Positions 1 to 48,740 of a DNA stretch of 64,000 nucleotides are shown in pieces. A model generated the notes under the pieces. It worked only from the letters and a program-made list of their open reading frames with translations. It searched no databases and was not told the origin of the DNA. Both the position numbers and the translations under genes were made by a program. Within the stretch, counting starts at the first letter, position 1, and every line of letters begins with the position of its first letter. The DNA is taken from the NCBI GenBank assembly GCA_964035545.1, contig OZ037767.1, positions 1,313,680 to 1,377,679 on the forward strand, read 5' to 3'. The stretch comes from Bugula neritina (lineage: Eukaryota > Animalia > Bryozoa).

Positions 1-88
1 AGAAATCAGCTAGTATTAGTGGAGGAGTTCAAAAGACTGCTAGTTATAGCTGGTGACTATCCAATTACTACCATCTCCTGAGACATAC

Positions 89-2710
89 CTTTAGTCTGGT
101 AGTGACTAAGTTAGACCATGTTAGCCCCAGCGCAGGTAAGTTTCTATTTTCACCGCTACCTGTCATATCAGCCATGACCTGCAATAGTTTGACTGAGTAA
201 AACACAACTGAATAGAATACTTGAATATTAACAACGACACAGACCATACAATAAGGCACCTGGCGGCTACCAAAGAGTAGGAGATGTCTGGCTAGTCGGG
301 ACGTTAACATTTACACCCAACCCATTTACCTGGTTGACACAGAACACAGCTACGTGATACTCCTTTGCTAGACGATGCAACTGCACACCGATAGCTGATA
401 TGTCTTTAGATCTGGCAGATATTGTCTGTTGCTCATCTTGACCTCTAAACACAGCAGTGATTGAGTCTATGATGATGAGGTTAGTTAGACCTCGAGCGAG
501 GAGTTTTGGGACTTTATTCTCAAGTGCAGCTAGCAGCTGGTCCTGTGAGTATATTTACAAACATGACATTGGTGCTGGCAGCAAACATGAACTAGATTCT
601 TATAACGTGCAATGAAACCAAGTAAACAACAAGATGCTGTAGTAATAGTCTTTTCTTTTTTCAAAAACAAAGCCAACAGCTCAGTTTAGAATTCATAAAT
701 AAAAATGTGATGAAAATTTTTCAAAGCGCAAAATTCATAATGACAAATACTGTTTCTTTTTATACTGACTACATTATTAGTAAATGAACTGCAAACTAAT
801 ATTACAGGGTTAATGTCAAATGTAGTCAAAGCAGACGTATGCACAGCAGACGTATTAACAGAATACAAATGTAAATTACATCACATAATAGACCACCTTG
901 TTTGAAATATGCTCTACAAACACGTGATCAGAAAATCTGTGGTTAGTCAAAAGTGGATTATGGTGTTTGATTGACTGTTCAAGCTGCAGCAATCTTTGGC
1001 TAGGAAATACATCTTCAGTGCAGATATAGAGGCAATCTACAGCATAATACAAGATATAGAGGTAATCTGCAGCATAATACAAGATATAGAGACAATCTAC
1101 AGCATAATACAAGATATAGAGACAATCTACAGCATACCACAAGAATGTAATTATTAGTTTGATTGAAAATAAAACTACATTTCCTAAATTTTCCGAATTA
1201 CAAAAAACTAAATGAGTGTGCAGTTGTTGTACTCTAAACTAGTGCGCTAAGTTAATAGACACTAAAATTATTAATAGCAATAAGTACTAGTGATATATAT
1301 TATAAGTATTACTACTATTAAGTATTACTACTATTAAGTATTACTACTAAGTTACTAAATAAATCAGTAGCATAAAATACTAACTGCTAAGTCTACCATT
1401 ACGTTTCACCAACTGAGAGTGAAGAGCCAGCTGCATGCAGATCTGAGTTTTCCCGCAAGCACTCTCTCCAGATATCTCAGTTATTCCCTGACAGAGGATG
1501 CCTCCTGTGAATAGAAATATCTTTTACCTCTTACTTCAAAGAACAGGATCACTGAGTTAATATAAAAGCTTATAGTTAATCAATTGAAATTTGAGTCCAA
1601 ACACTCTTCAATCTTAAATCATCACTGAGTCATTATCACTTGTAATATTTGACAAAATTTCTTGCACATCTTTATCTTAGCTTTCTACGATAGTATTACC
1701 GAAAGGAAACTAGAATATATCCCCTTAAATTTAAGATGCTTACTACTACTATTATTATTTGTTGATGTTTTAAAATCATTTTAATTAGTAAAGCAGCTAA
1801 CTCAGGTGTGTATTTGAAGAAAAAATACAGTAAACAGTCTAAAGCATTAGCAGTCATTAGTGAAACCATATCACAGCAAAAGTCATTGATTAAATTATAT
1901 CACAGCAAAAGTCATTGGTTAAACTATAGCACAATAGCAGCAGCCAATCATAAGAAGACTAATAAGATTTAGTGAAGACAAAAAACTTACCATTTAAAGC
2001 TTTATCGATTGAGTCGCATCCAATGGGCAACTTTTGATAGTCTAATTTCAGACAATCCAAAGCTGTGAAATAAAGATGAATAAAAGTTCAACTTAAACAT
2101 TACAGCAATAAATTTTGCTGATATAAAATAAAATGTGAAATGACTATGACTATACCTGATATAACTTTTATAGGGTACAACAAGTTGCAAGCTTGTTCTT
2201 TAATATTTTCAATTTTAGCTGCGGAAATCTGAGTAGCTCTTTGAAGGTCAGCGGATCCTTTTACAAGAACATCTTCCAGTTTTGAAATTTTAGCTAAAAG
2301 CATAAAATAGGGTAAAAATTTTGAAACATTTAGATTTACTTCCGATAGTAATAACTACAATACCAATTTAATTACATAATTTAAAAGCAAGTGAGTAATA
2401 GTATGAACTCAGAAAATAAATCACAATAACTACAATATCAGTACGTGATGATAATGATTCACAGCTACACGTAAGTTTTAATGTGAATCAATGAATCATT
2501 AAAACTAGAAGTAAATCAAAATCAATTTGATTCACTTTTAGTTTTAGTATCAAAATGATTTAACAGCTTGAGATGCGTTAACTTAAACTGAAGTTGAAGT
2601 TATGAGTGTGGTCGAAAACATAAAATTAAATTAAAACATTAAAGTGCACCGTTCTTGAGCTTTTTAATTAAGTCTGGATGAATTGCCAAGCCATCAACTG
2701 GAAGACTCAT
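89..2710 (-). CDS. XRCC3: XRCC3, RAD51-paralog DNA repair protein; multi-exon, 3' end runs off the left edge
   Basis: Exons ~2650-2710 (MSLPVDGLAIHPDLIKKLKN), 2156-2293, 1991-2062, 1397-1504 (GITEISGESACGKTQICMQL, Walker A), 897-1036 (LYICTEDVFPSQRL), 330-542 (LIIIDS Walker B; VFCVNQ), 89-178 (PALGLTWSNLVTTRL). Motif order matches human XRCC3 (GITELAGRSSAGKTQ, YICTEDAFP, PALGITWAN). Confidence 0.93.
1022..1140 (-). repeat. 30-bp tandem repeat x4 spanning an XRCC3 3' splice site
   Basis: Unit (-) GTATTATGCTGTAG|ATTGTCTCTATATCTT; the last copy is the functional acceptor at 1037/1036. Confidence 0.92.
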
Positions 2711-3093
2711 GTTGGATGTGAACTGAAGTTCTGGAGCAGTAGGAGCATTTCCTGCCTTTCAAAATTTAGATAACTATTGGCATTGCGCTGCCGAAGTCAC
2801 TTTAACTATTCCCGCTAAAATTAGCACCAACAAAGTCAATTCATTTGCTAAAAAGAGAAGGCAACCTTTCACAACGTGTTTTGCCTAAAGTCTAAACATT
2901 AGTTTATAACATAGTATTATTATTATATCAAAAAACTAGACTGCATTATTTTTTGCTATATCTTATTTTTTGAGTTTAAAATATACAATAAACATTGATT
3001 AGAAATAGACAATAGTTTTCATATTGTTTCTTCTTTTAATAACCGAACTCACTTCCTTCGAATGTGCCCAGTTACAGATTCCGGAAATTAACC
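2711..3093. promoter_or_regulatory. Bidirectional promoter between XRCC3 and SNX6
   Basis: Start codons at 2710 (-) and 3094 (+) are ~380 bp apart, head-to-head. ETS-like CACTTCC (~3050) and TTCCGGAA (~3079) lie in the gap. Confidence 0.7.
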
Positions 3094-6000
3094 ATGATGG
3101 TGGGTGTTGCTACAATTAAATACTTAACCATATTTATTATAGTCATTTATTGCCACCTTGTTCCCTTGTGTTTAATCGTTTGTCATAGTTCGTTAGTGTT
3201 TTATCGTAATTTAATATAAGCTTGTTTGACTTTTATAGTAAAAAAGCCGCCGGTGCTTACAGAATCTTACTCTTAGTAATGGTTCAATCAAATTCCATTT
3301 GAATTTCATTCAAAATTATTATTTTTATGATTATCAAATTGAAATTCAATCCTAATGGCTGATTGAGTAATCACTATCAGATTCAGTGATAAACTAAAAC
3401 TCATAATATTAATCATCATCAAGTAATCATAATAACCACGATGACCCTCACAACCAGTGTGACTGTTACTATAACTGCGAATTTGACAGTAGCGATCATG
3501 TTGATGTTAACAGTTAATCATAATGATAATCATAATAATAATGTAAAACTTAACCAACAGAAACTTATTCTGAAATTCAGCTACATTTTTATCATATTTA
3601 TAATCGTAGACATTATGATGATGATTGTGATCATCATTATGTGCAATTTGAAATTAACATAGCATTAACAAATTTAAATTACCCATTTAAATTTGTTGGT
3701 TTTAAGGCTTTGCCTTATGATAAACTAAAGTGACTATCATTATGTAAGAGTAAAAGTAAACAGTAACTCAAATTGTAGACACCCTCAGTCTCATTATAGA
3801 TTATCGATACTTACAGTTATGCTTATAGAGTTATAGTAACAGCAATACTACTAGTTATACTTATAGTTATACTAAATATAATAGTTGAAGTTGACAAATT
3901 AGACTAGACAGGGATATAAAATTAAAAATATTTAATAATTTATATTGTATTATTTTTATTTTAACTCAATATAATTACTATTAAGAGAATAAATATATCA
4001 TAAACTCATCTATAATAGTATGACGGATATGTTTCTAAGTAATAAAATATACCAGATGCAGTAGTAGCTCTTTTCTAAAACAAATCTTTAATTGCAGTTA
4101 ACTGCACCTTTTCAACTAATACAATAAGCTAAAAATAATGTAGTAGTTGTCAGTAATTTAGCTCATCAAACCCATTAGTTTAATGCATAGTCAATATTTA
4201 GGTATATAATATAATCCATAAACTACATAAAATAGAGTGTAGCAATTATTGTCAAAACTTTACTAGCTTCCTACACTCAATTTGAATCTGAAGAAGCTTT
4301 GCTTTTCTGTAGGACGGTATGGATGACATGATGGAGGATGCCCCTCTACACGACCCTGAACCACCAAAGGTCAAGTTTACTGAATAATTTGATTTCTTTA
4401 GCATTACTTCCAGCATAAAACTGTACATCTTGTTATGTAATCAGTTGTATAACTGCCTGATAATGTTTGTAGGGTCGTACAGCCACAAACACTTCTGTAG
4501 ATCTCAATGCAGACAGTTCCCTGGAGATAGACATCAGTGATGCTCTTAGTGAAAAAGACAAAGTCAAATTCACTGTTCACACTAAAGTAATATATTCACT
4601 GTTCACACTAAAGTAATATATTCACTGTTCACACCAAAGTAATATATTAAACCTAAAGTTGTCTTCTTTATTTGTAAAACTTTTTTTACAAAATATTATG
4701 ATACTTTTCCACCTCAACCTTTTTGTGGTTTTGCATTATTTTAATTGTTTTCTGTTATTTCTATGAAATGTCAGCCATTCAAAGAATTGGTTTCACTACC
4801 TTTTAGATGGACTCTATTTTTGCACACATTCCTTCTTCTAATTGCAGTTTTGTCAGTTATTGTGGAGTTGTCTTCCTCATTATTCAATATTTATCTATAA
4901 TTAATCTCTAAACGTAAGCTGTATTTCCTGTCTAGACTACACTCCCTGCGTTTGAGAAGCCGGAGTTCTCGGTGGTGCGACTACACGAAGAGTTTGCATG
5001 GCTACACGACCGGTTTGTGGAGAATGAAGAATACGCCGGTGTGATTGTGAGTCATGGCCGTACTATTTTGTGTCCTTCCGAGATATTTGAGCAATAATGA
5101 AAATATGCTATAATCTTGTACTAATACTCTTTTTGTATTTTTTTTATTGTTGGTAATACTACTGACATTATCCTAGGTAATGTAGTGCTATGGAAACCTA
5201 ATTATAATATACTAGTATGCAGTAGTGAGTCAAGTAACGTGAGTTAGTCCTAGTAGTGAGTTAAGTAGTGATTTAGTGGTGGTAGTGAGTTAGTAGTGGT
5301 AGTGAGCTGATAGAGAAAATAGTTCTGCGAAGCAATGTAATCATTGCCAACTCTTGTTTATTGTGCTATAATAGCATCATTCCGTATTTTCGTTATATTT
5401 TATTGCATGGTATGGTATTGTATTCAGTATTTCCGGACGTATGACATACTCATAGTTTTTCCAACCACATAAAGAGTAGTCTTTTTTTGTGAATTACTAT
5501 TGCATGTCGTATTTCCTCTTTCAAGATTCCTCCTCCACCTCCTCGACCAGACTTCGATGCCTCGAGGGAGAAGTTACAGAGACTGAGTGAGGGAGAAGGT
5601 GCTATGACTAAGGAGGAGTTCACTAAGATGAAGCAGGAGCTGGAGGCGTGAGTATAACTCTAATCAGTAGAATAGTAATATCACTTCTTGAAAGACTTGT
5701 GATAGGAAGATAGTAGGAACTATTCCATCGATATACACAGCTGAACTATAAACACTGTTCAGATTATCATAGAGTCGGCTGCACTCGATAGGCTTTTTCT
5801 TTATGTCTTGTAGCATATATGTAGTTATAGTAGAGGGCAAATGATAGACTCGGAATAATTCATGTCTCTCCCTGGAGTCACATGATTGGCTAATGTTGGT
5901 TCCATTCTAAATATAAAGGGAATTCATTTCAGGGCCTTCTTTACACGAATAGTGCCCTGCTTTCTTCTCCTGTTTTTTATTGTCTCCTCCGTCAAAGCCT

Positions 6001-22723: not shown

Positions 22724-25700
22724 CTAAATAAGCCCTTTGAGTTTCTTATATTCGGAGAGGTTCAGTGAACGCTTTGGTGCCGTATCTTTGATAGATGAGA
22801 TGCCTTTGGGCATCATGGACAGGGCCGAGCCTGCAATATGACAGTTAGTAATAAACAGTATATCTACTTGTAGCATACTACTGCAGTATATATCCAGTTA
22901 TTATTATTACTAGATACTAATACTAACTGAAAGTCTCAAGTGACAACTAGTTACTAGCATTGAGAGTAATCCATTATGAGAGTTATATAGTGTAGTTGTT
23001 AGTAGAATAGGTATAAACACAATAATAATGGACTCACTGTTGAGCAGAGGGACGTCAAAATCTATTTTGATATCAAAGTCGTGCACTTTGAATAGGTCAT
23101 CAGTTTTTCTCTCCTCTTTCTTCTCTGTGGCTGGCTGCAAGATCAGACAGACCTACATTACTTACTTACTACTTACTTACTTCTTACTTACTTACTTACT
23201 ACTTACTCACCTCTTACCGGCACATACTACACCCACAAGTGTAACACCAACACACCTTACTCATACACTAAACTCACGATTAGAGAGATCACCCACTCAT
23301 AACCAGAAGACTCAGTACTTCTGACTGCCACCAATTGTCAACTAGTGAGACTAAATGCCAGAGTCTCACTCACAGTTGACAGTGACTAACTCACAGCTCA
23401 CAGTGACTAGCTCACAGTGACTAACTCACAGCTCACAGTGACTAGCTCACAGTGACTAACTAACAGCTCACAGTGACTAACTCATAGTTCACAGTGACTC
23501 ACTCACAGCGACTAACTCACAGCTCACAGTGACTCACTCACAGCTCAGAGTGACTCACTCACAGCTCACAGTGACTAACTCACAGTTCAGAGTGACTCAC
23601 TCACCCCAGAGGAGGCAGCCTGTGCTTTAGCCTTCAGCGCTGCTTCGGCAGCGTCAATACTGTCCTGTCTGACTACGTCTGGTTTCACTGGCTGTGAGCC
23701 AGAATCAACTGCTTTCTTTTTAGTGGCTTAAAGAAAGAGAAAACAGAGGAAATCAGTTTTTAACTACACTTAGTGGAAGTCGTCTTCTTTTCCCAGTGAC
23801 TGAGTATGCAGTGAGCCGTAAAAATTAGTATAATAACATCAAGTATACATATTGCTTGCTGATGCAAAAAATCTATTTATGTCTTGCACAGTTTTGAAGA
23901 ATACAAAGAACCACCTTTACTAGGCTCATAAAACAGGATATTATGAACAAGAATTCCAAAATTTTCCTGAAAAGAGATGGCAAAGTGTCTAGTGAAACTC
24001 ACCGAGGACAGGACGGCACGACTGCCTGGTAAATGGGTCAGCGGCAGCATTTTTACTTTCCCTCCACTCCTTTCTCATTGCCTCCTCGGCGTGTTTGATG
24101 TTATTCATTCTGTTTCTCTCATTGATCCACCTGCAACAGCCGTATGTGCATATAGCATTGGCACCATGTGAATATATATTATTATACATATCAAAGTACA
24201 AGCATAATACAGCATTACAAAGTATACAACAGTGTAATACGATGTTATACATGTTATACTATATAATACACAGCGTAACACGCTTACGTAATGGAGTTGA
24301 GTTTCCCCACTCTTCTTTTATCCAACTCCGAGGCTTTCTCCTCGATTTCTTCGAGTTCGCCTGTTAACTTCTGAACTCGAAACTCGTCACCAGCCATTTC
24401 CGCCAACTCCTAAAGTTAAGGAGCTCAAGCTATGAGTACAATGTAGAACAGGGGCTACTACTCAACATACGACATACGACATACAGTACACAAACCTTCT
24501 CTTTCATGACTTCGTGCTTTCTGACGGCAAAATTCGTAGGATTTTTCTTAAATCTTTTCTTTTCCGCCACCAAGTCGACGATTTCTTTGTCTGTGAACTG
24601 ATGTTTCATGTATTTCTTGAGCTCGGCGACCTGTAAACAAGCAGCTCGTTATTAGACATCATTGTACAATGAGTTACCACACCTCGCGTACCATCAAACT
24701 TAGGAGTTACTCTCAATGCCACAACTATAAGAATCTCACAGCATGTTGGTGGTTCAGACAGCTACATGCTGATCTGCTCGCCGCCGGTGAGACTAAACAA
24801 ACAATAACAAGAATAACTTCACAAGAGACAGGCCACTCACCTTCTTCCTAACATCCTCCACAGTTGGCAGGAAACTCCCCGACACCATGATTGCCTCTTT
24901 CCACTTGAAGAACTCCTGTTCCGTGAATCTACTGTTGGAGACAAACTCTAGCCTGTAGACCCTCTCAGAGGCGCCAAACCTGTAAGGGTGGTGCACTAAA
25001 CATTAGCACATGTACACATAGGACCTAAGTCTATACTCTATATCATACATTGGTAAGAAATGGTGAGCCAACCTTAGCTTGAGGCCCTTATTGGTTCTGG
25101 TCGTACCCAGCTGGTATATCTTGGCAGTTTCTACCACGTCAACTATCTCTGCACACTGAAATAGACAACTCGTTTGTGTCACAAAATCTTAGTGCAAATG
25201 CATAGTGTAGAGTTTTAAAAAAATGAAAACTACCTTCCAATTTATATCAAGTAAAATAAGTAAATGCAGAAGTTCTACTTACCCTGTACACCGGGTAACC
25301 GTCTTTATTTCCTATGCCGATTCTAACAAAGCACCCGCATATAGTCTTCTTAAAGAATGGCATGTGACACCACTGTTCCAGTCTGTGACGTGACACCCGA
25401 ATGTCTTCAATATCTTCCTTCACCTGGATAAACTTCACTGGCTCCCTTTCTCTAGACCTCCGTGATCTGGTATCACTTTCACTACCCGAATCACTCCTGC
25501 AAGTTGTTGTATATTAACTGCTATGTTGTATATTAACTACTAAGTTATATATTAACTACTATGTTATATATTAACTGCTATGTTATATATTAACTACTAT
25601 GTTATATATTAACTGCTATGTTATATATTAACTACTATGTTGTATATTAACTGCTATGTTGTATATTAACTACTAAGTTATATATTAACTACTATGTTAT

Positions 25701-27011
25701 ATATTAACTACTATGTTATATATTAACTGCTATGTTATATATTAACTACTATGTTATATATTAACTACTATGCTATATATTACCTACTAAGTCATATATT
25801 AACTGCTATGTTATATAATAACTACTATGTTATATATCATGACGATACTCACTGCACAGAACTGCGACTGCTAGCTTCGGCATCTGACCCAGAATCCTCT
25901 CCTTCATCTGACTTCCTTTCCGCTGCCTCGCTGTCGCTGCCTGAGGAGCTCTCAGAGATGAGACCCATGCGCTGAGCCTTAGCCTCTACAGAGCACACAA
26001 CTCCCAATTAGACACACACTAATCTCTCTTATACAAACTCTGAACTTTCTATTACCACAATGCAGTATTATATATTAGACTTGAGAGTTTATATTCCATG
26101 AAGGAAAAAATATTTTAAAATATCCTAAAGTTTTGCTATGAAATTGTTAAAACCGGATTCTACTGTCATTTGCTGTTATGTTGACACAACTATTAGCTCT
26201 CACCGATATGTCTGTTTTACACACCTTGCGTTTTTCTTGCGTGACGCTTTGCTTTCAGTTCCTCAATGGCGGAACGCTGTTTGGATTCTTTACTATTCTC
26301 TATGGCAGCCTTTCTCTCTCTACTGCGAGCTGAGGCAGCATTCTCATCGGCAGCGATAGAAGCTGACACAGGTTTAGCAGAGGGGGCAGCTGGCTTTGGT
26401 TTACTGACTTTCTGCTTTTTAGAGGCTTCACCTTTCTGTTTCCTCTTCAGCTTTTGTTCAATATCAAATCTATAAGAGAGAGATATGGAGACGTGAGGTT
26501 ACTAGGTACCTCTGGAGTTAGTTACTAGCTACCTCTGGAGTTAGTTACTAGGTACCCCAAGTGTTAGTTATTAGGTACTTCAAGTGTTTGTTACTAGCTA
26601 CCCCAAGTGTTAGTGACTAGGTACCTGGTTTTTAACATATCTCTTCTCTCCAGACGCTCAAATATGATTTTCTCTCTTTCCTTTTGGGTCATCTGCTCTA
26701 AGCGTTTCCTGTCTTCCTCATCTCCCATTAGATTATCGTCGTAGCCATCATCAAACACCTCCTCTTCACCTGATGAGCCGCCAGATTTATTTCCTTTGGG
26801 ACTGCCAGCCGCTGAGCCTCCCGATACTTCCCCTTTAAGTAGCACAAGAGTGAGCAGTAGTGGTAGTGGTGGTAGTAGTAGTAGTAGCAATAGTAGCAGC
26901 AGCAGCAGTAGTAGTAGTATAGTAGTAGTAGTAGCAGTAGTAGTAGTAGTAGTAGTATAGTAGTAGTAGTAGCAGTAGTAGTAGTAGTAGCAGCAGTAGT
27001 AGTAGTAGTAC

Positions 27012-27055
<44 letters not shown>

Positions 27056-27154
27056 CTAGTAGTAGTAGTAGTAGCAGTACTAGTAGTAGTAGTAGTAGTG
27101 GTAGTAGTAGTAGCACTAGTAGTAGTAGTACTAGTAGTAGTACTAGTAGTAGTG

Positions 27155-27188
<34 letters not shown>

Positions 27189-27449
27189 CACTAGTAGTAG
27201 TAGTACTAGTAGTAGCAGTACTAGTAGTAGTACTAGTAGTAGTAGCAGCAATAGTAGTAGTAGCAGTAGTAGTAGTAGTACTAGTAGTAGTGGTAGTAGT
27301 AGTAGTAGTACTAGTAGTAGTAGTAGCAGTACTAGTAGTAGTAGTAGTGGTGGCAGTACTAGTAGTAGTAGTACTACTACTAGTAGTAGTAGTAGTAGTA
27401 GTATTGGTAGTAGTAGTACTAGTAGTACTAGTAGTAGTAGTAGCAGTAC

Positions 27450-27496
<47 letters not shown>

Positions 27497-28250
27497 ATAG
27501 TAAGACCTACCATCCTCCTTCTCTGATTGGTCAGAATCATCACTGGACGAAGACGATGAAGAGCCAGAACTGCTATCACTCAATGATTTGTTTAAAGTTT
27601 TCTTTGCTGGAGTTTTTGCAGTCTTTAATTTTCTTTTAGACTTGCCGTTAGCAGACCACTAAACAAGAGGAATGTGAGTCACATGAGTAGAAGCCGCTTG
27701 ATATTCCAAGACAATTAGTTCAATCTTTTTCAATCAGAGCTAACTCTATCATAATCAGTGAAGCTGCAGCAAATTTAAAATATAAAAACAAAGGTTGAAG
27801 CGAGAGAGAATGCTTGAGAAAGAAATTATTCAAAAGTCATGTGACTTCAGCAATGCTACTGTGAAACGCATTTCTTAGCGACCTAACGATTTATATACAG
27901 CACCGTTTTTACCATGAACCCGAAATATTTTTAAACAAAGCTAAAAACCGGAAACATACCTCCTCGTCACTCTCTTCAGAACTGGAGTCTGAGTAGGTGG
28001 CCAGGTTGGGTTTGCTGACTGCTTGTTTCCTCGGCCTTGTACGTCTTTTAGTGCTCTGTATCAAACCATACACTTTACTGACATTCTGATGGACTGAAAA
28101 CAATGAACTGACTTATTCAAATAAAAACTGTCCCTTAAATACAACACAAACCTCCTCAGAATCACTGTTACTACTAGCTGATGAATTTCCTCCTTCACTA
28201 TCCGACGATTGGATTGTCTTCTGTCGCTTGGCTTTATTACCACCCGCCAT
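22724..28250 (-). CDS. RTF1: RTF1, PAF1 complex subunit with Plus3 domain, ~15 coding exons
   Basis: [38 protein letters not shown]; Plus3 [30 protein letters not shown]...[18 protein letters not shown]; [10 protein letters not shown]; [17 protein letters not shown]; C-terminus [14 protein letters not shown]. Start [11 protein letters not shown] at 28250. Confidence 0.96.
23368..23604 (-). repeat. GTGAG-rich 7/14/21-bp repeat starting at an RTF1 donor
   Basis: On - strand GG|GTGAGTGAGTCACTCTGAACTGTGAGTTAGTCACTGTGAG... Confidence 0.88.
25507..25835 (+). repeat. 19-bp minisatellite filling an RTF1 intron
   Basis: Unit TATATTAACTACTATGTTA, ~15 copies. Confidence 0.93.
26498..26626 (-). repeat. 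23-bp repeat x~6 starting at an RTF1 donor
   Basis: On + strand GTTACTAGGTACCCCAAGTGTTA variants; the last copy holds the donor AG|GTACCT on -. Confidence 0.88.
26855..27500 (+). repeat. Long imperfect (AGT)n microsatellite in an RTF1 intron
   Basis: ~650 bp of AGT with AGC/ACT/GGT interruptions. Confidence 0.97.
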
Positions 28251-28399: not shown

Positions 28400-29260
28400 T
28401 GGTAAGATAAAATCACAGTAACTATCATATCAACTACCATAGAGTACTGAATGATTTGTGTTAGCAAAAAACAACTACAAGTAATAATAATGATAACCAT
28501 GACGATAAGATTAGGTAACTACAGTAATAGTAATAAATATAATCATAACAATAATATTAATATGAATTAAAATATTTACATTAATATAAACATTTTTTAT
28601 TTAAACTTAAATTTCCAGTTACAGGCACAGCTATTAGTATTAGACTTAGTATTACATTTACTGGGCTATGCAGTATACTTGACTTCATCTAATTTTATTA
28701 GAAACGAAAATAGAAATTTAAATTGCGAATTTTTTTTAAACTTTAACCTGAACTTCAACTTAAGTCAACAACAATAATATGAATATGAAATACATATCAA
28801 ATAATGAATACAAAATGAGAATGAATAGCTATGGCTGAAATTGAATGAGAATAACTGGAAGTAGGTAACTATAAGAATAACAATAACATTATCAAAATGA
28901 TTATGATTAATATTATCCTCAAGTTCATGATTAACAATAACTATAAGTATAACTCAACTGAGGTAATAAACTGAGGTAATAAACTCTAACTGTAACACTA
29001 CCTGTAAGTTAAAGTGTAACTCAAACTTACTAACACTAACAGCAACACCAACTGTAATTGTAAGAATGACAATTAGAATAAGGTTCAGAATGGCAGTGAA
29101 CGCTTACAGTTACAGTTAGTCACTTAGTGTTACTGTTGGTGTTAGACTTAGTGTTACTTATACTTATAGAGTTATACTCATACTCATACTGATACTGTTA
29201 GTGTTAGTCATAGTGTTACAGCTACTCATTATGATTAATGATTCAATCCAATAATTAAAA
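28400..29260. other. 6-bp-phased TNA tract (RTF1 5'-UTR intron)
   Basis: From 29055: TAA ttg TAA gaa TGA caa TTA gaa TAA ggt TCA gaa TGG cag TGA. Confidence 0.85.
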
Positions 29261-29299
29261 GCGGCCAGCAATTATTTAAGTAATATCAATTAATTTCAC

Positions 29300-30010
29300 T
29301 ACATAACAATTTCATATCACGATAAATTCCATCCAAATACTGCGTGCGTTTAACTGCAGTCAACGTGAACATGTATTGGTAACATTTAACATCCTAAAAA
29401 ATACAAGAATTATCATTACCGAGTTTCCTGTGGAGTGTCTCTTTCCAATACGGGCAAACAAGTCAAAATATTTTGGACGCCTCTGTTTAAGCAGCAATAT
29501 CGACTCTAGTAAGTAAATAGCGCACGCAGAACTACATTGGCGCGATAATGTTCTGGTCCGTTTTAAAGTAAGTCGATTTTGTAATTCTAGCGATAACCAA
29601 TGATGAGACGGTATTCCTTACATATGCATCATTGCTTATGTAGAGAGTTATCGTATTTACTTAATAGCTAACGCGTAAAGAAATCACTAATGAATGTAGT
29701 TGTGACACAGGCATACCTCCCGCACTAAATCTCTCCCATGCAGTGGTTTCTGTTTAAGTCCTACTTTACATTAAAGCTAATTGTGCCGATTCCAATAAAA
29801 TACGTTACGTAACAACATTGCTCTCTCTATCTAATCTAACAATACGCTTCAAAGTTTTACTTAGATGTCATATAGTACTTCGATAGTTAATTTTTTATTT
29901 CCATTGTCACTTTTGCATTAAAAATAAATGAGTTATCATTAACATTTTTATGCCTTCACCGAGTATCATCGAGTATCAGTTGGTCGATGATTTTATAATA
30001 AAGTTAATGT
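29300..30010. promoter_or_regulatory. Bidirectional promoter with non-coding first exons of RTF1 (-) and the COX20-like gene (+)
   Basis: CpG-containing stretch between two divergent genes. Candidate donors: CTCG|GTAATG on - at ~29420 and AAT|GTGAGT on + at ~30008. Matching acceptors lie at ~28298 (-) and ~30752 (+). Confidence 0.55.
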
Positions 30011-30089
30011 GAGTTCTATATCATCAAGCATGTAATTTTACTCTCTTACAGTTCTCGCATAATTCTTTCGTTTCAGTTTTTCCTCCTTT

Positions 30090-30590
30090 CTACTTCTATT
30101 ACTATTAGTATTACTAGTAGTAGTACTAGTACTGTAGTAGTTCTACTTCAACTTGTACTTGTAGTTCAGGTTGTAGTTCTAGTTCTTGTAGAACTACTGC
30201 TAGAAGCTCAAGGATAAGTACTACTACTGCTGCTGCTGCTGCTGCTACTACTACTGCTACTACTACTACGTCTACTACTACTAGTCTATTACTATTAGTA
30301 TTACTATTACTATTAATATTAACTATTAGTATTATTATTATTTTAGTTTGTCACAAAGTGCAAGCTTTAGTTTGACTTTGAGTTTAGGTACTACTACTAC
30401 TACTACTAGTACTAGTAGTAGTACTACGTCTACTCATTCTAAGTGCTATACAACTGCATTAATGATTAATTTAAATATGTTTAGCATCATTGTGATTGTC
30501 ATGGTGTAATTTTCAAAGTCAAAGTTCAAATCAAAAGTCAAAGTCTGAATTCTGAATCTCTTGTTAAACTTTAAGCTCTCACATTCTGGT
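30090..30590. other. 6-bp-phased TNA tract mixed with CTA/CTG triplets (COX20-like 5'-UTR intron)
   Basis: From 30481: TTA gca TCA ttg TGA ttg TCA; also TAA ttt TCA aag TCA aag. Confidence 0.7.
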
Positions 30591-32648: not shown

Positions 32649-33499
32649 GGCTATAAAGTTGATAATGAATAGAGAGCAACTGGAATAAGGCTGTAATAGC
32701 TAATGAGCATTGGAAAATAATTTATTGATTTGGTTTATATTTTTACCAACAATATAAACTGGCTATTAGATATGCTGTTGTAACTTTGTAATGACAGAAT
32801 TACCACTAGTGGGTAGTAGTTTGAAGTTGTCTCATCTCTAAGCTTTTTTACTTCGCAGTGTACATAAGTTCCAGTATATTATATGCAAAACACAGCTGTT
32901 TGTTTTTAACCGATTTTTTTATTTGCCAATTAAAATAAAGGTTGATCTTTTATAAGTGATGGAAACGTTGTTTATGAGTGGAGTGGTTTCTATACCACCA
33001 TCTCGATTATAAACAGTTGAAATATACAAAAACAAATAGGCAATATTTTCTGTCAGCTTCAACTGCAACTGTTCATAGAATTAAATTTTCTTCATCATTT
33101 CTTGTCTAATTGTATATGATCATTTTGTTTATGGTTTGAATAGTCCTAGTGATATGGTACCGCGTTTTTCACTGGCTCGGCAGGAATGAGAACATTATAG
33201 AGTTATCATTCCCTAAACGTTTTGGGTAGGATAACTCTACAGTCAAATCGCTGGTACACTGACTGCGTTCGGAACCCTCAGTTTCGACCCAAGCTAGCGG
33301 CTTCTATCAATGCTCTCTTGCAGTTCAAAGTTTTGTAGGTCTTGTTGCAGCTTATTTTCTCCTTTTAGAAAGCAGTTTCCGGATTTAGCTTAGAAAATTA
33401 AAATGCTATCAATACCAGGCATTAAAGTGATACTATAGCGCTATAATTATGTTTATTATAATCACCATGTGTAAGAGTAATGGAAAAAAAGACACTAGA

Positions 33500-34460
33500 A
33501 TATTAATAACTATCAACTTCAAACACTAGCAGTGAATGAGTAATTGTAAATACTTATAGTTATAGTTATACTAATTACTTATTACTAATACTAATACTAA
33601 TAGTAATACTGATACTATTTACTATTAGTATTACTATTAGTATTAGTAATAGTAATACTAATAGTAATAGTAATACTCATAGTCATACTCATACTGTAAT
33701 ACTAATAGTAATACTAATACTTGAATTTATAGTAATAGTTAAAGTTATTGTTAACTACAAGTAGTGAAGTACAACTTTAACTTAAGTTATTAAGTAAACC
33801 ATTAACTTAGAGTTAGTCCTATAAGTTTCAAGTATTACTATTACAGTATGAGTATTAGTATTTAGTATAACTATTACATTTACTGGTATTACATTTACTA
33901 TTTAATTTTATATTACATTTAGATTTAGTTTTAACTTAGTCTTATAACTAAATACTATTACTATTAGTATTACTATTATTACTATTAGTATTCTCATTCT
34001 GTATTAGTATTAAATTTAATTACTGTAAGTCAAGGTGTATCACTATCAGTATCATATTCATGATGATATTGATTATGAGTATAACTATAACTATAGGACC
34101 AAGTGTTACTATTAGTATTACTATTAGTATTAGACTTAGTAGTATTACTAGGTACAGTAATCGTACTCAGTATGAGTACGAGTAATACTAATAGTAATAG
34201 TAATACTTATACTAGGGCCAGCAATTAATATTATAATAATATGATATTAACACTAGTAATAGTGACAGTTATCATAGTTGTCATAACAATTATTATAAAT
34301 TAAAATTATCATTTTCATATTGATACTCATTAATCAATTTTGTTTAGTAGTGGTAGTATTAGTTATTAGTTATTAGTATTAGTTATATTCATAATTGTTA
34401 TAATATTTTGCAATAATGATACTTAAGATCAATTGTGTTTTTATCACATTTTCATTTTGA
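33500..34460. other. 6-bp-phased TNA tract (DPP9 5' region)
   Basis: From ~33647: TAA tag TAA tac TAA tag TAA tag TAA tac TCA tag TCA tac TCA tac. Confidence 0.85.
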
Positions 34461-35372: not shown

Positions 35373-42761
<7,389 letters not shown>

Positions 42762-43926: not shown

Positions 43927-46263
43927 TCATTTGTTGCTGTTCCTATGCTGCTGAATGTCATTTTCATTATAGCCTTTAAACCACGAGTGGCCCAAGACTT
44001 GGTGAATCGTAGGCCTGTCCACCCACAAAAACTTCAAACAGTAAGTTGAAAGACTTTTGCATTCACCTGACACTGATCTTCTTCCCTGCAATACATTGTA
44101 AAGTTAATACAATTTATAAGATAGGATCTGGCAAATGATTTTCAGGCAAACAGTATATCTTGCAGGAAATAGAAATGACAGAGCAAAAGCTGTCTACTAC
44201 GTATGCTATATGCTGTAACAGTTTTCTGTAGGTTGCTTTGCATGAAGGCACCAAGCAACCGTTTCTAGCAGGAGTTATAAATGATTATGATTATACCAAC
44301 CCTTGGCCACTGCAAATCCAGTTTTCTGTGCTCTTCTAATAGACTGGCATTACCCTTTGTCTCATCAAAAGGCATTCTCCCAGTTACTAGGATAAAGAGG
44401 ATAACTCCAATAGCCCATATATCTGCTTTCTTAGGTGGGTAAGGCTCACCCTATAAGGTATAGAGTTGTCACACCATTTCTATTTGTACAAAACACTTGA
44501 AAAACTGACATTATTGAGTTAAATAAATCTTGTTGATCAGGTGACTAGTTTTCTTAGAGAAACATAACATCACTAATGAGCTTTTATTGCCTAAAAATAT
44601 TTAATTTTCTGTCTATTTTACATCTTAACTTTTTGCAATTTCACTATAACAAATAATTGTTACCCTTTAACAGACAAAACTTAAGTTAGTTCACTTGTCC
44701 GATTGTTGAGATAAAATTGAAAATTTCGTTTTTTAAAAAAGAGCTGAAGACGAAGAATTAAAAAATGAACTCACCTTTAAAATCTCTGGTGCGGCGTAGG
44801 ACTTAGAGCCACAAAATGTTTTGCTCAGATCATCGTCATTGCATCGTTTTACAAACCCAAAGTCACAGAGTTTGATATTATTTAATCTATCTATGAGCAT
44901 ATTTTCTAGTTTCAAATCCCGATGTGTGATATTCAGGTCATGGAGATAACGTACAGCATCAGATACCTACATGTGTATACAATAAAAGTGCATATACATG
45001 TGCATACAATACATGTGCATGCAATTCACTAGTGCATACATTATACAATATAACATTTCACAATTGCATGCATTTACATTTTAAACGTAATTCTTGTATA
45101 TTACTGTGTAAAATAATTTATTTAAAATCAGAAAAAGCTCCAAATTTTTTACTGTATAAACATTTTACACAAATATTTTAGATTTAACGGAATTAGAATA
45201 AGAGAAACTAATAAATAATTCTTTGATTCAATCAATAAATTAATACAACTTTTTATTCATTGAACTGAAAAAATTCGATATAATTTTCAAGCCAAAAACA
45301 TTGTCATTGCGTCATTTTGCTTGTAGCTTTACTAATTGTATATAAATCTAATTCTAGAAAATAAAAATTATACCTGGTGAACCCATATTTTTCCGGTAGA
45401 TTCTGAAACAGCACCTTGACTTTGAATAAACCTAAGTGTGTCGCCTCCCTCCACAAACTCGAGGATCATATACACTCTGTGACCTTCCATAAAATAGTTC
45501 AACATCTTAACAATGTTTGGATGACTCAGATGCGGCCAGTTATCTAACTCTCGAGGTAAAAACTTTTCTTGGAAATCAGCAGGAGCACTTTTTCTATCAA
45601 TAATTTTGATTGCCACCTGATCAGGTAGCGTAGAGTGATTGTTTGGATAACTTGGCTGAATTCGTGTCGCGTGTTTCACTTTGGAGTAACTTCCAGCCCC
45701 TAAAGTATCTCGTACCAGATAGCCTCGTTTGGCTAGAACTGTGCGATAAGTTATAGGAAGGGGTTGATTTTTTTCTCCTAAATTATTTTGCACATAGTAA
45801 GGAGCTTGGGCTTCAATTGCAACAGGGCCTGTAGAAGCGCCCATATCAGCTTTCCATGCCTACCATCAAAATATCCTCAAGTATTATACAGCACAATACT
45901 ATATTCCACAAAAACATTAACATATCAGCAAATTGAGTGAACAATAATAATTTCTATACATTTAATATTTTAGACTTTTACATGTGTAACTTGTTGGAAG
46001 TACATATTTTATAACCAACTTACTCTGTGTTCTCGAACTCTGCCTGATCGGGTGGTGACCCCTTCACCCCGTGCCATAGCCACATCAAAGGAGTTACCAC
46101 AAGCAGAGGAGTTAGCAGCATTAGATGTTCTATATGAGAAGTTTCTACTACAGGAAGGGGGGTGTTCTAATGCCCTCTCTCTACGCCCCAGTAACGATCC
46201 AGAAGATATGTGGCTAGCAGATGAATCGTGGCCTGTCTTGCATCGCAGTCCATGAGAATTCAT
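43927..46263 (-). CDS. Testis-specific serine/threonine kinase (TSSK family); start at 45844 or, with an upstream in-frame exon, 46263
   Basis: Exons (46024-46263), 45374-45859, 44775-44966, 44302-44450, 43927-44085. [34 protein letters not shown] (TSSK signature), [43 protein letters not shown]. Confidence 0.9.
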
Positions 46264-47129: not shown

Positions 47130-47460
47130 TGAGTCTGAGATAGTTTACAATTTGAGTTACAGAATGAGTATCACTATCAGTATGAGCAGGCTACTCAACT
47201 CAAGTGTATGTAGTAATATAGATAATATTTGTAGAATTACATAATTTACAAGTTTATACTAGCTTGTATTATTATCATTAGTCAAAAAATTATCAGTATT
47301 ACAATCAATGTGACTCTCATTTTGATTTACGCTGTAACACTAAGTAACTAACAATAACCGTAACTCTACGTATTTAACTTCAAGTTTAATTTTATGCAGG
47401 TGAAATTCATTAAATTAACGCCTAAATTACAGTTAAAATAATTTATAGTAATAGAAAACA
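47130..47460. other. 6-bp-phased TNA tract (left of the Drosha/TSSK promoter)
   Basis: From 47293: TCA gta TTA caa TCA atg TGA ctc TCA ttt TGA. From 47165: TGA gta TCA cta TCA gta TGA. Confidence 0.8.
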
Positions 47461-47499
47461 ATTAAAACAGCAAACCTCTATATAAAATTCTATTATTTG

Positions 47500-47502
47500 C
47501 CA

Positions 47503-47536
<34 letters not shown>

Positions 47537-47990
47537 TTCAAACAACTAATAATGTACAGAGTTGTATTATTCAACTAATCAAGCGAACTCAATGTGCAGA
47601 TGAATGCGTGTCGCAAAGCGTCTGCTAGAAACTATGGAAACTAAACGTCACGATCTGTATATTTGGAAAAAATATGTTTTTTATAAATTTCAATTTTTGT
47701 TAGTAAAAAATCATTTGTTTTTTTTTATGCCAATTTAAAAAAAAACAGCTTTGAACATTTTTACCGCACGTAGTTTTTTCCGCAACTGAGCTATGTAGTG
47801 AAGTCGAAATAATTTGGATTAGCTGTGGCTACCACTCAGTGTTTCAGTTTTGCCACAAGTTGAATCACAATGTAGCAGGTCTCAAAGCTCGTTCGGCCAA
47901 AATAATTATATTACATTACCAAATTATTTACTTCTAAATTCTTACTCTTTTTGGGGAAAAAATAAACAATAGCAGAGGTAATCCAAAATT
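47500..47990. promoter_or_regulatory. Putative core promoter shared by Drosha (+) and a - strand unit (probably TSSK)
   Basis: CpG-containing stretch with poly-T/poly-A runs between two divergent genes, flanked on both sides by 6-bp-phased TNA tracts. Confidence 0.45.
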
Positions 47991-47999
47991 GTCAGTCAG

Positions 48000-48740
48000 A
48001 CTTTATCATAATGATAATGATTATAAATATATTTAATATTAATTGTCATCATATTCATAGTCATTATTATTATATGTATCAATATCCCATAATTATTGTC
48101 ATTATGATTGTGTATTGTTCGTGTTGACTTTGATGTTCGTGTTAAGATATTGATGGAGTATCACTATAAGTATGAGTATGACTTCAATTTAATAGTCGTT
48201 TTGACATGACATCTTGATCTTGAACTTTCACTAGCAGAGCGAGTACTAGTAGCCAAGACTGGTCAATTTTGAGTAAAGCGAAAAATTTTGGGCGTTACTA
48301 TTGCTAAGAGTAAGTCTAACAGCATCAACTTCAAGCATGAACTCGTCTAAGAAAGGAGTATCACTGTTGCCGATGGACCTTGCGGTATGTCAAACTGATA
48401 CTAAAATCAGCATAACTCACAAGAACAAGTCTAAAAACTAAAATTTTTCAAATAACTATAAGACTATTAATTATAAAATTAGATGTTGCTTCAATAATTA
48501 TGCTCACTATTTTAATTTATAGCTAATGCTATCATCATACACTTTACACAGTATGAGTATGAGTGAGTGTAACTGTACCTGTAAGAGAAAATATTTAAAG
48601 GAAATGGAATGTTAAATTGAATTGATTTGAGTTAGTAGACCTGGTAATATGGTTAAACTTATAGGCCTACGTAAGCTGAAAGTATCTCTACTAATACAAC
48701 CATTCAAAGTGAGTTCATAGATTACACTACTTATACTTAT
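48000..48740. other. 6-bp-phased TNA tract (Drosha 5' leader and first coding intron)
   Basis: From 48161: TCA cta TAA gta TGA gta TGA. From 48305: TAA gag TAA gtc TAA. Confidence 0.72.

What the first reader, a model, noticed from the sequence alone, without database searches (positions are those of the whole stretch)
28400..30590. Candidate undescribed promoter code: non-repetitive (TNA-NNN)n tracts in 6-bp phase flanking housekeeping promoters
Seen: both sides of the RTF1/COX20-like divergent promoter carry 0.5-0.9 kb in which T-N-A recurs every 6 bp while the middle base and 3-bp spacer vary. Example from 29055: TAA ttg TAA gaa TGA caa TTA gaa TAA ggt TCA gaa TGG cag TGA. Phase holds for 4-10 units and then resets. 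The varied units mean this is not a simple satellite, and TNA is strand-symmetric. The same texture appears at 2340-2640, 3270-3900, 33500-34460, 47130-47460 and 48000-48740, that is, just inside the transcription units at every housekeeping-type promoter. By eye it is missing from the 5' ends of the unknown gene, the DUF4347-like gene and the nested EF-hand gene. Inference: a selected cis-signal such as an array for a polymerising or tandem-domain DNA-binding protein, or a chromatin licensing mark comparable in role to CpG islands or the 10-bp PATCs of C. elegans. Telomeric TTAGGG is one member of the TNA-NNN class. I know of no description of such an element, but cannot exclude one.
Basis: partly seen in the sequence, partly recalled or inferred. 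Interest (0 to 1): 0.9.

Follow-up and report, generated by a model that had tools for sequence, protein, structure and literature searches.

The report
Six-base scar lattices flanking bryozoan promoters
The 6-base rhythm beside these gene starts is real and widespread in this bryozoan genome, but it looks like a record of repeated small DNA duplications, each re-joined with one flipped C:G base pair, and not like a selected "TNA promoter code".

Summary
OBSERVATION CONFIRMED. All seven listed tracts show a 6-bp period. TNA lag-6 observed/expected is 2.3-4.2 in six of them (z 3.9-8.5 against dinucleotide shuffles). Tract 2340-2640 is weaker (1.6, z 1.6). AT-matched controls and the promoter cores show nothing. 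The signal survives repeat masking and is not one transposon family.

INTERPRETATION ONLY PARTLY UPHELD. TNA is a projection. All four bases carry the period, and it is best kept in the weak/strong (A:T versus C:G) alphabet. The unit is about S-TANTA. Five bases are copied from the neighbouring unit (80-87% identical). The one C:G pair keeps no memory of its orientation. Genome-wide, neighbours are flipped in 63% of 19,704 cases.

These flips are tied to unit birth, not to later mutation. Only 8 of 80 orthologous sites differ from the published Bugula neritina draft. The tracts keep their place in that sibling lineage but diverge faster than their flanks.

BEST READING (about 0.45): stacked break-and-rejoin scars of the kind left by hairpin-forming (hAT-like) transposases, confined to promoter-flanking first-intron DNA. 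No enzyme was identified, and no RNA data were found to anchor transcription starts.

This scan has found the same texture before in other windows of this genome. I found no published description.

The parts
28400..29260 (.). Hexamer tract C, left of the RTF1-side/COX20-like promoter core. It has an internal dyad near 29093: an AACACT-type array at 28980-29060 faces an AGTGTT-type array at 29100-29230.
   Evidence: Lag-6 base match 0.46-0.60. TNA lag-6 O/E 2.52, z 6.1. Inverted pair I9. Hexamer print-out.
29261..30039 (.). Non-periodic promoter core between tracts C and D. A putative plus-strand first coding exon (ATG at 29548, donor GTAAGT at 29568) and a putative minus-strand exon ending near 29421 are read from the sequence only.
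   Evidence: No lag-6 signal (O/E 1.23, 78 of 300 shuffles reach it). CpG o/e 1.30 against 0.43 for the window. Sequence. The exon calls are inference.
30040..30590 (.). Hexamer/trimer tract D, right of the core. It is rich in (ACT)n/(AGT)n and TACTAT/TAGTAT units.
   Evidence: Lag-6 match 0.49-0.66. TNA lag-6 O/E 4.19, z 7.6. 38% is TRF-maskable and the rest is still periodic.
2340..2640 (.). Tract A (weak). It lies in intron 1 of the RAD51-paralogue gene (minus strand) and is about 220 bp longer in the sibling lineage.
   Evidence: (z 1.6). Exon 1 ATG at 2710(-) matches the annotated CDS start in L028.
2648..2710 (-). First coding exon of the RAD51 paralogue (MSLPVDGLAIHPDLIKKLKNG).
   Evidence: Maps to the annotated CDS start L028:10001. 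Conserved in the alignment. Rad51 Pfam hit on the downstream exon 270-554(-).
3050..3128 (.). Block about 80 bp long that is identical in the two lineages, inside the A/B core. It contains CCGGAA and is probably core promoter or 5'UTR.
   Evidence: Alignment.
3270..3900 (.). Tract B, between the core and the sorting-nexin (PX/Vps5) start codon at 4319(+). That start codon follows a polypyrimidine-TAG acceptor, which suggests a 5'UTR intron.
   Evidence: (z 5.7). PX domain exon at 5953-6264(+).
33400..34460 (.). Tract E, the cleanest S-TAWTA lattice (AATACT / AATAGT / ATTACT / ATTAGT in equal numbers).
   Evidence: z 8.5.
47130..47460 (.). Tract F, left of a core at 47461-47899 (CpG o/e 1.17), on the side of the minus-strand protein-kinase gene.
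   Evidence: z 3.9. Pkinase exons at 44736-45859(-).
47900..48740 (.). Tract G, right of the same core.
   Evidence: z 5.1.

Best explanation
The tracts are a mutational by-product, not a code.

Each tract grew by many separate small steps. A step adds about 6 bp: five bases copied from the adjacent unit (consensus T-A-N-T-A), plus one joint C:G pair whose orientation is not inherited. That pair is preferentially the complement of a neighbouring joint. Sometimes two adjacent joint bases are complemented in place.

This is the signature of a staggered double-strand break that is re-joined after hairpin-type end processing. The best-known example is the scar left when a hairpin-forming cut-and-paste transposase (hAT/Transib/MULE class) inserts and then excises.

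Each scar recreates an AT-rich, palindrome-like site bounded by C/G. Such a site resembles the preferred target reported for the hAT element Tol2. Scarred DNA would therefore become the next target, and discrete tracts of 0.3-1 kb would build up.

The tracts lie in tolerant first-intron or 5' DNA about 0.3-1.2 kb either side of promoter cores, presumably because that chromatin is accessible in the germ line. The core itself is spared.

Shown here: the step structure, the complement rule, the coupling of flips to unit birth, the confinement to tracts and the position next to promoter cores.

Inferred: that a transposase-type enzyme makes the breaks, the self-targeting, and the role of chromatin.
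For: 1. Isolated differences between neighbouring units are complement flips in 45 of 61 cases, 38 of them C<->G. In ordinary minisatellites of the same window only 22 of 130 are flips, and transitions dominate there.
2. Lag-6 correlation is highest in the weak/strong alphabet in 10 of 10 tracts. Control arrays keep purine/pyrimidine best.
3. Around a C/G that recurs at lag 6, the other five positions are 79-87% identical. The C/G itself is 49% same and 51% flipped. Its immediate neighbours flip in only 6-9% of cases.
4. In units with two C/G, exactly one flips in 67% of cases and both in 7%.
5. When the neighbouring positions are identical, the flip fraction is 0.61-0.69 (p about 0.008).
6. 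Genome-wide, TATTA-S-TATTA-S-TATTA gives 12,461 flipped of 19,704 (0.63), against about 2,700 hits for the mirrored control patterns. A simulation of 'insert a copy with a complemented joint' gives 0.67. A random redraw gives 0.50.
7. Flips are not ongoing point mutation. Against the published B. neritina draft only 8 of 80 palindromic-context C/G sites in tracts differ (7 of 558 elsewhere) at about 12.5% substitution divergence. Against another DNA data set at most 3 of 54 differ.
8. Adjacent double changes are complement-in-place 14 times and reverse-complement once. This fits two abutting processed ends, not small inversions.
9. An active hAT family is present: three identical copies with a 563-aa ORF and about 150 terminal-repeat matches.
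10. Hairpins on flanking DNA, opened by host enzymes and joined with footprints, are described for hAT, Transib, MULE and RAG (PMC5499845). The Tol2 target consensus TNA(C/G)TTATAA(G/C)TNA is AT-rich and palindrome-like (PMC2753552).
11. The tracts keep their position but turn over fast between lineages.
Against: - No element was caught inside a tract.
- The three hAT copies I could read do not sit in tracts. Two of their three right-hand flanks fit the usual 8-bp nTnnnnAn target, and that target predicts a period of 7-8, not 6.
- Lags 7 and 8 are depleted.
- No RAG1-like or RAG2-like gene was found.
- Outside the tracts there is no excess of isolated 6-bp duplications (42 observed, 63 expected) or of '5 copied + 1' duplications. 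A freely hopping element does not obviously predict this.
- Canonical hAT scars flip both joint bases, whereas here usually one flips.
- Indels between lineages are multiples of 6 in only 4 of 16 tract gaps, although that alignment is ambiguous.
- At a spacing of two units the flip fraction is 0.59, not the 0.50 of the simple model. C-then-G is 1.5-1.6 times commoner than G-then-C. Neither is explained.
Confidence: 0.45

Rival explanations
1. An endogenous, non-transposon process at active promoters builds the lattice. Candidates are recurrent transcription- or replication-associated breaks repaired by end joining or polymerase-theta-type templated synthesis, or a domesticated nuclease tethered to promoter chromatin. 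The step structure is the same, but the cutter is a host activity.
For: The process is strictly confined to promoter-flanking tracts, with no isolated events elsewhere. No transposon was seen in tracts. Tracts show dyad organisation and strand switches inside clusters, as expected around a bidirectional centre. Cores are CpG-undepleted.
Against: I know of no host nuclease or repair pathway that gives a fixed step of about 6 bp with a complemented joint. Polymerase-theta insertions vary in length. Fold-back copying would give reverse complements, and these are rare (1 against 14).
Confidence: 0.25
2. One reading: the lattice is a selected cis-signal. It would be an array for a polymerising or tandem-domain DNA-binding protein, or a chromatin licensing mark. 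Selection would keep the weak/strong pattern (one C:G per 6 bp, TA steps), so that strand-symmetric changes are neutral.
For: The position is specific to promoter flanks and is conserved between two lineages. The weak/strong pattern is the best conserved feature. The tracts are very abundant genome-wide.
Against: - Neighbouring units share even the free middle base in about 80% of cases, which indicates recent copying and not convergence on a consensus.
- C<->G is scrambled while the equally 'neutral' A<->T flips stay at about 10%.
- Flips are tied to unit birth, not filtered from point mutations.
- Tract sequence and length diverge faster than the flanks.
- Several CpG-rich islands in a 200-kb sample lack tracts.
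Confidence: 0.12
3. Ordinary cryptic simplicity: hexanucleotide microsatellites expanded by replication slippage and then decayed by point mutation.
For: TRF finds many weak period-3/6/12 arrays in the tracts. A 6-bp indel is seen in another data set. Higher-order 12- and 18-bp copies are visible.
Against: Slippage copies the C/G orientation, yet observed memory is zero or negative. The mismatch spectrum is the opposite of that of the window's real micro- and minisatellites. Homogeneous runs are under-represented: the C..C and G..G pairs together make 37%.
Confidence: 0.08
4. One interspersed repeat or satellite family (for example a foldback element) inserted near promoters.
For: Inverted and direct 8-10-mer pairs are equally frequent inside tracts. 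There are local dyads.
Against: There is no shared consensus between tracts, only short array-to-array matches. Units differ from tract to tract. The inverted/direct equality follows from flips in a TA-N lattice, which is closed under reverse complement.
Confidence: 0.03

Closest known systems
Excision footprints of hairpin-forming cut-and-paste transposons (hAT such as Ac/Ds, Tam3, Hermes, Tol2; also Transib, MULE; chemistry shared with V(D)J coding joints)
   Same: A short direct duplication of fixed length remains after break and rejoin. The base or bases at the joint are replaced by their complement, in place. The preferred target is AT-rich and palindrome-like with C/G at the edges (Tol2: TNA(C/G)TTATAA(G/C)TNA, PMC2753552). 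Hairpins on flanking DNA are joined by host end joining (PMC5499845). That the flanking base changes to its complement in Ac/Tam3 scars is from my own knowledge of the classical literature.
   Different: The period is 6, not 8. Usually one base pair is flipped, not two. Hundreds of scars are stacked into kilobase tracts at thousands of promoters. No isolated scars occur elsewhere. No element was caught in place.
Microsatellites / cryptically simple sequence made by slippage
   Same: Short tandem units, local homogeneity that decays with distance, and length variation between lineages.
   Different: Variation between units is dominated by complement transversions, and the orientation of C:G is not inherited. 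Ordinary arrays in the same window show a transition-dominated spectrum.
PATCs (10-bp periodic An/Tn clusters) in C. elegans germline-gene introns (from my own knowledge)
   Same: Non-coding periodic DNA concentrated in introns of broadly or germline-expressed genes.
   Different: The period is 6 bp, not about 10 bp, so there is no helical phasing. The units are TA-N lattices with one C:G, not A/T runs. There is no functional evidence here.
Tc1/mariner (e.g. Sleeping Beauty TAC(A/T)GTA) footprints (from my own knowledge)
   Same: A palindromic joint whose central base pair is resolved in either orientation.
   Different: Those scars carry constant transposon-end bases. Here the copied bases are local and differ from tract to tract.

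Membership tests
hAT-type (hairpin) excision footprint | Tandem duplication of the target-site length (8 bp in canonical hAT) | tested here: not met
   The period is 6. Lags 7 and 8 are at or below background. Two of the three right-hand flanks of the resident hAT fit an 8-bp nTnnnnAn site.
hAT-type (hairpin) excision footprint | Joint base or bases replaced by their complement, in place | tested here: met
   45 of 61 isolated differences are complement flips. One scrambled C:G pair per unit. Adjacent doubles are complement-in-place 14 times and reverse-complement once. 63% of neighbours are flipped genome-wide.
hAT-type (hairpin) excision footprint | A hairpin-forming transposase family present and active in the genome | tested here: met
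   PF05699 gives 14 matches, including three identical 563-aa ORFs, and there are about 150 terminal-repeat matches. RAG1/RAG2-like: none.
hAT-type (hairpin) excision footprint | Elements found inserted in the scarred DNA, with a target duplication of matching length | tested here: inconclusive
   No terminal repeat occurs in the 264 kb I hold. The three copies read are not in tracts.
Slippage microsatellite / cryptic simplicity | Units copied faithfully, with divergence by ordinary (transition-rich) point mutation | tested here: not met
Slippage microsatellite / cryptic simplicity | Length changes in whole units | tested here: inconclusive
   4 of 16 tract gaps against the sibling lineage are multiples of 6. 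Many are 6n plus or minus 1-2, and the alignment is ambiguous. One 6-bp indel is seen in another data set.
Interspersed repeat / satellite family | A common consensus shared by copies | tested here: not met
   Only 18-175-bp array-to-array matches between 10 tracts.
PATC-like periodic intron DNA | Periodicity of about 10 bp made of A/T runs | tested here: not met
   The best lag is 6 in every tract.
Selected promoter mark (CpG-island-like cis-signal) | Sequence or phase conserved more than neutral flanks, with a reader protein | tested here: not met
   Position is conserved. Identity is 76.6% with 160 gap columns, against 84-92% in the flanks. Substitution rate equals that of the flanks. A reader protein is not testable with these tools.

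The most novel reading that the evidence does not exclude
A nuclease tethered to promoter chromatin repeatedly cuts the DNA just beyond the core of broadly expressed promoters in the germ line. It could be an active or a domesticated hairpin-forming transposase. Each repair writes a 6-bp unit with a flipped C:G joint, so promoters carry a kilobase 'tally' of past cutting. In the stronger form, the resulting TA-N / one-C:G-per-6 lattice has itself been co-opted, for example as a nucleosome-organising or licensing mark.
Probability: 0.15. Interest if true: 0.9.

Novelty: new variant of a known kind. Interest (0 to 1): 0.66.

Why it matters
If the reading holds, thousands of bryozoan promoters are flanked by DNA made almost entirely of stacked repair scars. 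That would be a new genome-scale mutational signature, and it would mark germline-accessible promoters without any expression data.

It would also show how a self-renewing target site can turn sporadic breakage into kilobase sequence domains. It would give a natural record for studying hairpin-end joining in an animal phylum with almost no molecular genetics.

There is a practical side as well. These tracts (about 2-8% of the DNA I sampled) confuse repeat maskers, aligners and short-read assemblers. They could easily be mistaken for regulatory code.

Tried and rejected
- RNA evidence. No RNA run holds the stretch. All four runs laid on it were DNA contigs, so transcription starts and introns could not be anchored.
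- Genome-wide sampling. 
- RAG/Transib idea (5-bp target duplication, H3K4me3-reading RAG2). No RAG1 or RAG2 match in the genome. The tool's control genomes also gave no hit, so this is weak negative evidence.
- AID/APOBEC-plus-REV1-type C-to-G mutation as the source of the flips. Rejected, because orthologous sites rarely differ and transitions are not elevated.
- Small inversions, fold-back copying or template switching. Disfavoured, because adjacent double changes are complement-in-place 14 times and reverse-complement once, and the middle base of the unit does not flip together with the C/G.
- Pure random redraw of the joint base (an untemplated or transposon-end nucleotide). It predicts 50% flipped neighbours, whereas 61-69% is seen locally and 63% genome-wide.
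- Alternating (C..G..)n arrays made by 12-bp slippage. Rejected, because orientation is the same at a spacing of two units in only 41% of cases.
- Isolated scars outside tracts. None in excess.
- Gene annotation of the 200-kb block from ORFs. Uninformative.
- Literature. The B. neritina draft-genome paper and the Flustra genome paper do not mention such tracts. Searches for 6-bp periodicity in introns and for stacked footprints at promoters found nothing relevant.
Full report
WHAT WAS CLAIMED AND WHAT IS THERE

In them T-N-A recurs every 6 bp while the other bases vary.

- The quoted example at 29055 is exact.
- In six of the seven tracts TNA at lag 6 is 2.3-4.2 times expectation, and none of 300 dinucleotide-preserving shuffles reaches that (z 3.9-8.5). 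The seventh tract (2340-2640) is weaker, at 1.6 times expectation (z 1.6).
- The promoter core 29261-30039 and four AT-matched control stretches show nothing.
- The signal survives TRF masking (lag-6 match 0.40-0.51 in unmasked tract DNA, against 0.25-0.35 at lags 5 and 7).
- The tracts share no common element.

SOURCE OF THE SEQUENCE

- The window is C3:1313680-1377679 of a 216-Mb assembly.
- Earlier notes of this scan call the genome a bryozoan.
- An exon of the window finds a Bugula neritina protein at 84% identity.
- The published B. neritina draft (214 Mb, PMC7576161) is colinear with window 65-13023 at about 86% identity. The window therefore comes from a sibling lineage of the sequenced B. 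neritina.
- The tracts are present in independent data: the published draft and four public DNA runs. They are not an assembly artefact.
- Tract bins collect 10^3 to 10^5 times the word depth of unique bins, so the motifs are extremely abundant.

WHAT THE PERIODICITY REALLY IS

TNA is a projection. All four bases are correlated at lag 6, and C and G most strongly.

Recoding shows that the weak/strong alphabet (A/T versus C/G) keeps the period best in 10 of 10 tracts. The window's ordinary mini- and microsatellites keep purine/pyrimidine best, as expected from transition-dominated decay.

Isolated differences between neighbouring units are complement transversions in 45 of 61 cases (38 of them C<->G, although C and G are only about 13% each). 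In the control arrays the figure is 22 of 130.

Between C/G positions six apart the consensus is T-A-N-T-A (T 55% at +1, A 54% at +5). The unit is therefore S-TANTA, a TA-N lattice with one C:G pair per six bases.

THE KEY ANATOMY

Around a C/G that recurs at lag 6:
- The five other positions are 79-87% identical between neighbouring units. This includes the 'free' middle base, so the units are recent copies of each other and not convergent matches to a consensus.
- The C/G itself is 49% same and 51% flipped.
- Its immediate neighbours flip in only 6-9% of cases.
- A-to-T flips at weak positions stay near 10%.

In units with two C/G, exactly one flips in 67% of cases, none in 26% and both in 7%.

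When the surrounding positions are identical, the flip fraction is 0.61-0.69 (p about 0.008).

Genome-wide exact counts of TATTA-S-TATTA-S-TATTA are:
- C..C 3,450
- C..G 7,467
- G..C 4,994
- G..G 3,793
- Together, 63% are flipped, out of 19,704. The mirrored control patterns give about 2,700 hits.

A simulation in which each event inserts a copy whose joint is the complement of the parent's gives 0.67 at one unit and 0.50 beyond. A random redraw gives 0.50.

At a spacing of two units the genome-wide flip fraction is 0.59 (5,809 of 9,823). This rules out alternating arrays made by 12-bp slippage. It also shows that the simple model is incomplete: C-then-G is 1.5-1.6 times commoner than G-then-C.

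Adjacent double changes are complement-in-place 14 times and reverse-complement once.

FLIPS HAPPEN AT UNIT BIRTH

I aligned window 2100-4300 with the orthologous region of the published draft (L028). In reliably aligned tract columns, substitutions run at 12.5-12.8%, the same as in the core and flank (12.1-12.2%).

Only 8 of 80 palindromic-context C/G sites are flipped there, and 7 of 558 in the rest of the locus. In another DNA data set, at about 8% divergence, at most 3 of 54 such sites differ.

A clock-like flip fast enough to erase memory between units that are otherwise about 80-87% identical would have flipped a far larger share of orthologous sites than the 10% seen. The orientation is therefore set when a unit is made.

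The tracts keep their positions in both lineages. L028 period-6 domains 8601-9500 and 9951-10650 map to window 4007-3207 and 2748-2301.

They align poorly, at 76.6% identity with 160 gap columns, against 84-92% around them. Tract A is about 220 bp longer in the other lineage. That is fast turnover by indels, not conservation.

WHERE THE TRACTS LIE

The genome is CpG-depleted (o/e 0.43-0.51). The cores between tract pairs are less so: 1.30 at 29261-30039, 1.17 at 47461-47899, and about 0.75 at two others.

Evidence for each locus:
- At the A/B locus the published gene models put the RAD51-paralogue start codon at window 2710(-). Tract A fills the intron that follows.
- The sorting-nexin start codon is at 4319(+), directly after a polypyrimidine-TAG acceptor. 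Tract B (3270-3900) therefore most likely lies in a 5'UTR intron.
- An 80-bp block in that core is identical in both lineages.
- At the locus of the finding, RTF1 (Plus-3 domain exon at 25250-25513, minus strand) lies to the left. Putative first exons can be read in the core, but without RNA this is inference.

In an independent 200-kb sample there is one clear tract pair around a 500-bp core and one or two further tracts, about 2% of the DNA. Several CpG-rich islands there have none. The association is therefore with a subset of promoters. I could not test 'housekeeping'.

Outside the tracts, isolated 6-bp duplications (42 observed, 63 expected) and '5 copied + 1' duplications are not in excess. 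The process is confined to the tracts.

MECHANISM

A fixed-length local duplication whose joint base pair is the complement of its neighbour, or of random orientation, is what end joining of processed hairpin ends produces. hAT, Transib, MULE and RAG all leave hairpins on the flanking DNA. Host enzymes open these and join them with footprints (PMC5499845).

The hAT element Tol2 prefers AT-rich, palindrome-like targets, TNA(C/G)TTATAA(G/C)TNA (PMC2753552). This resembles the S-TANTA-S windows of the lattice. Each scar would recreate such a site, which would explain discrete, self-extending tracts.

An active hAT family exists here.

The identification of the enzyme is nevertheless unproven:
- The resident hAT looks like an 8-bp-target element.
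- Its three readable copies are not in tracts.
- Canonical scars flip two bases and give period 8.
- No RAG-like gene was found.

A single shared joint with a 7-bp stagger, or a '5 copied + 1' joint, would fit the numbers. I cannot tell these apart.

I therefore give 0.45 to transposase-type break-and-rejoin scars and 0.25 to an unknown endogenous break/repair process with the same step structure.

RELATION TO EARLIER NOTES OF THIS SCAN

The same texture was reported in several other windows of this genome.

- Note s1-472032 prompted me to test complement flips. My data confirm flips but show one scrambled C:G pair per unit, not two flipped joint bases as a rule.
- They agree with s1-441687 (TA every 3 bases, one C:G per 6 in scrambled orientation).
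- They argue against the fold-back copying proposed in s1-478510.

These notes were leads.

NOVELTY

I found no description of such tracts in the B. neritina draft-genome paper, the Flustra genome paper or targeted full-text searches.

The ingredients (footprints, simple sequence) are known. Kilobase stacks of them flanking thousands of promoters are, as far as I can tell, not described.

Noticed in passing
window 26856-27502: A 650-bp (AGT)216 microsatellite, 86% pure, next to or inside the 5' part of the RTF1 gene (minus strand). On that strand it would read as poly-Thr, Leu or Tyr if it were exonic.
   Followed up: no
window 3050-3128: A block of about 80 bp is 100% identical to the published B. 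neritina draft amid about 12% divergence. It contains CCGGAA (ETS-like) and is probably the shared core promoter or 5'UTR of the RAD51-paralogue/sorting-nexin pair.
   Followed up: partly
L028 (GCA_010799875.2 VXIV02002728.1) versus window 65-13023: The published B. neritina draft is colinear but only about 86% identical in non-coding DNA and 84% in an exon. The two assemblies represent different lineages of the species complex.
   Followed up: partly
L022-L024 (C1:30.46 Mb, C3:28.9 Mb, C5:1.59 Mb): Three identical copies of a hAT transposon with an intact 563-aa ORF, ending ...TTGACCCCAACCCTG. About 150 terminal-repeat matches occur genome-wide, most with a CATATG variant (non-autonomous copies). 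The family appears recently active.
   Followed up: partly
Genome-wide pattern hits, e.g. C1:1335534-1335651 (all minus) then 1335743-1336191 (all plus); window about 29093: Inside tract clusters the unit orientation switches strand at a centre (a dyad). C-then-G order is 1.5-1.6 times commoner than G-then-C. Neither is explained by the simple scar model.
   Followed up: partly
C1:5063405-5063510 and C1:5075597-5075700 (L008, L009): The same element of about 105 bp occurs twice, each time abutting a long (TA)n run. It may be a small mobile element associated with TA microsatellites.
   Followed up: no
window 11994-12713, 36870-37519, 25505-25837, 7544-7765: There are unusually many high-copy minisatellites: 14 bp x51, 24 bp x27, 19 bp x17 and 24 bp x9. 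Their mismatch spectrum is ordinary and transition-rich, and they served as controls.
   Followed up: partly
whole window and block: The genome is strongly CpG-depleted (o/e 0.43-0.51), with undepleted islands at some promoter cores. This implies gene-body or global cytosine methylation in this bryozoan.
   Followed up: no
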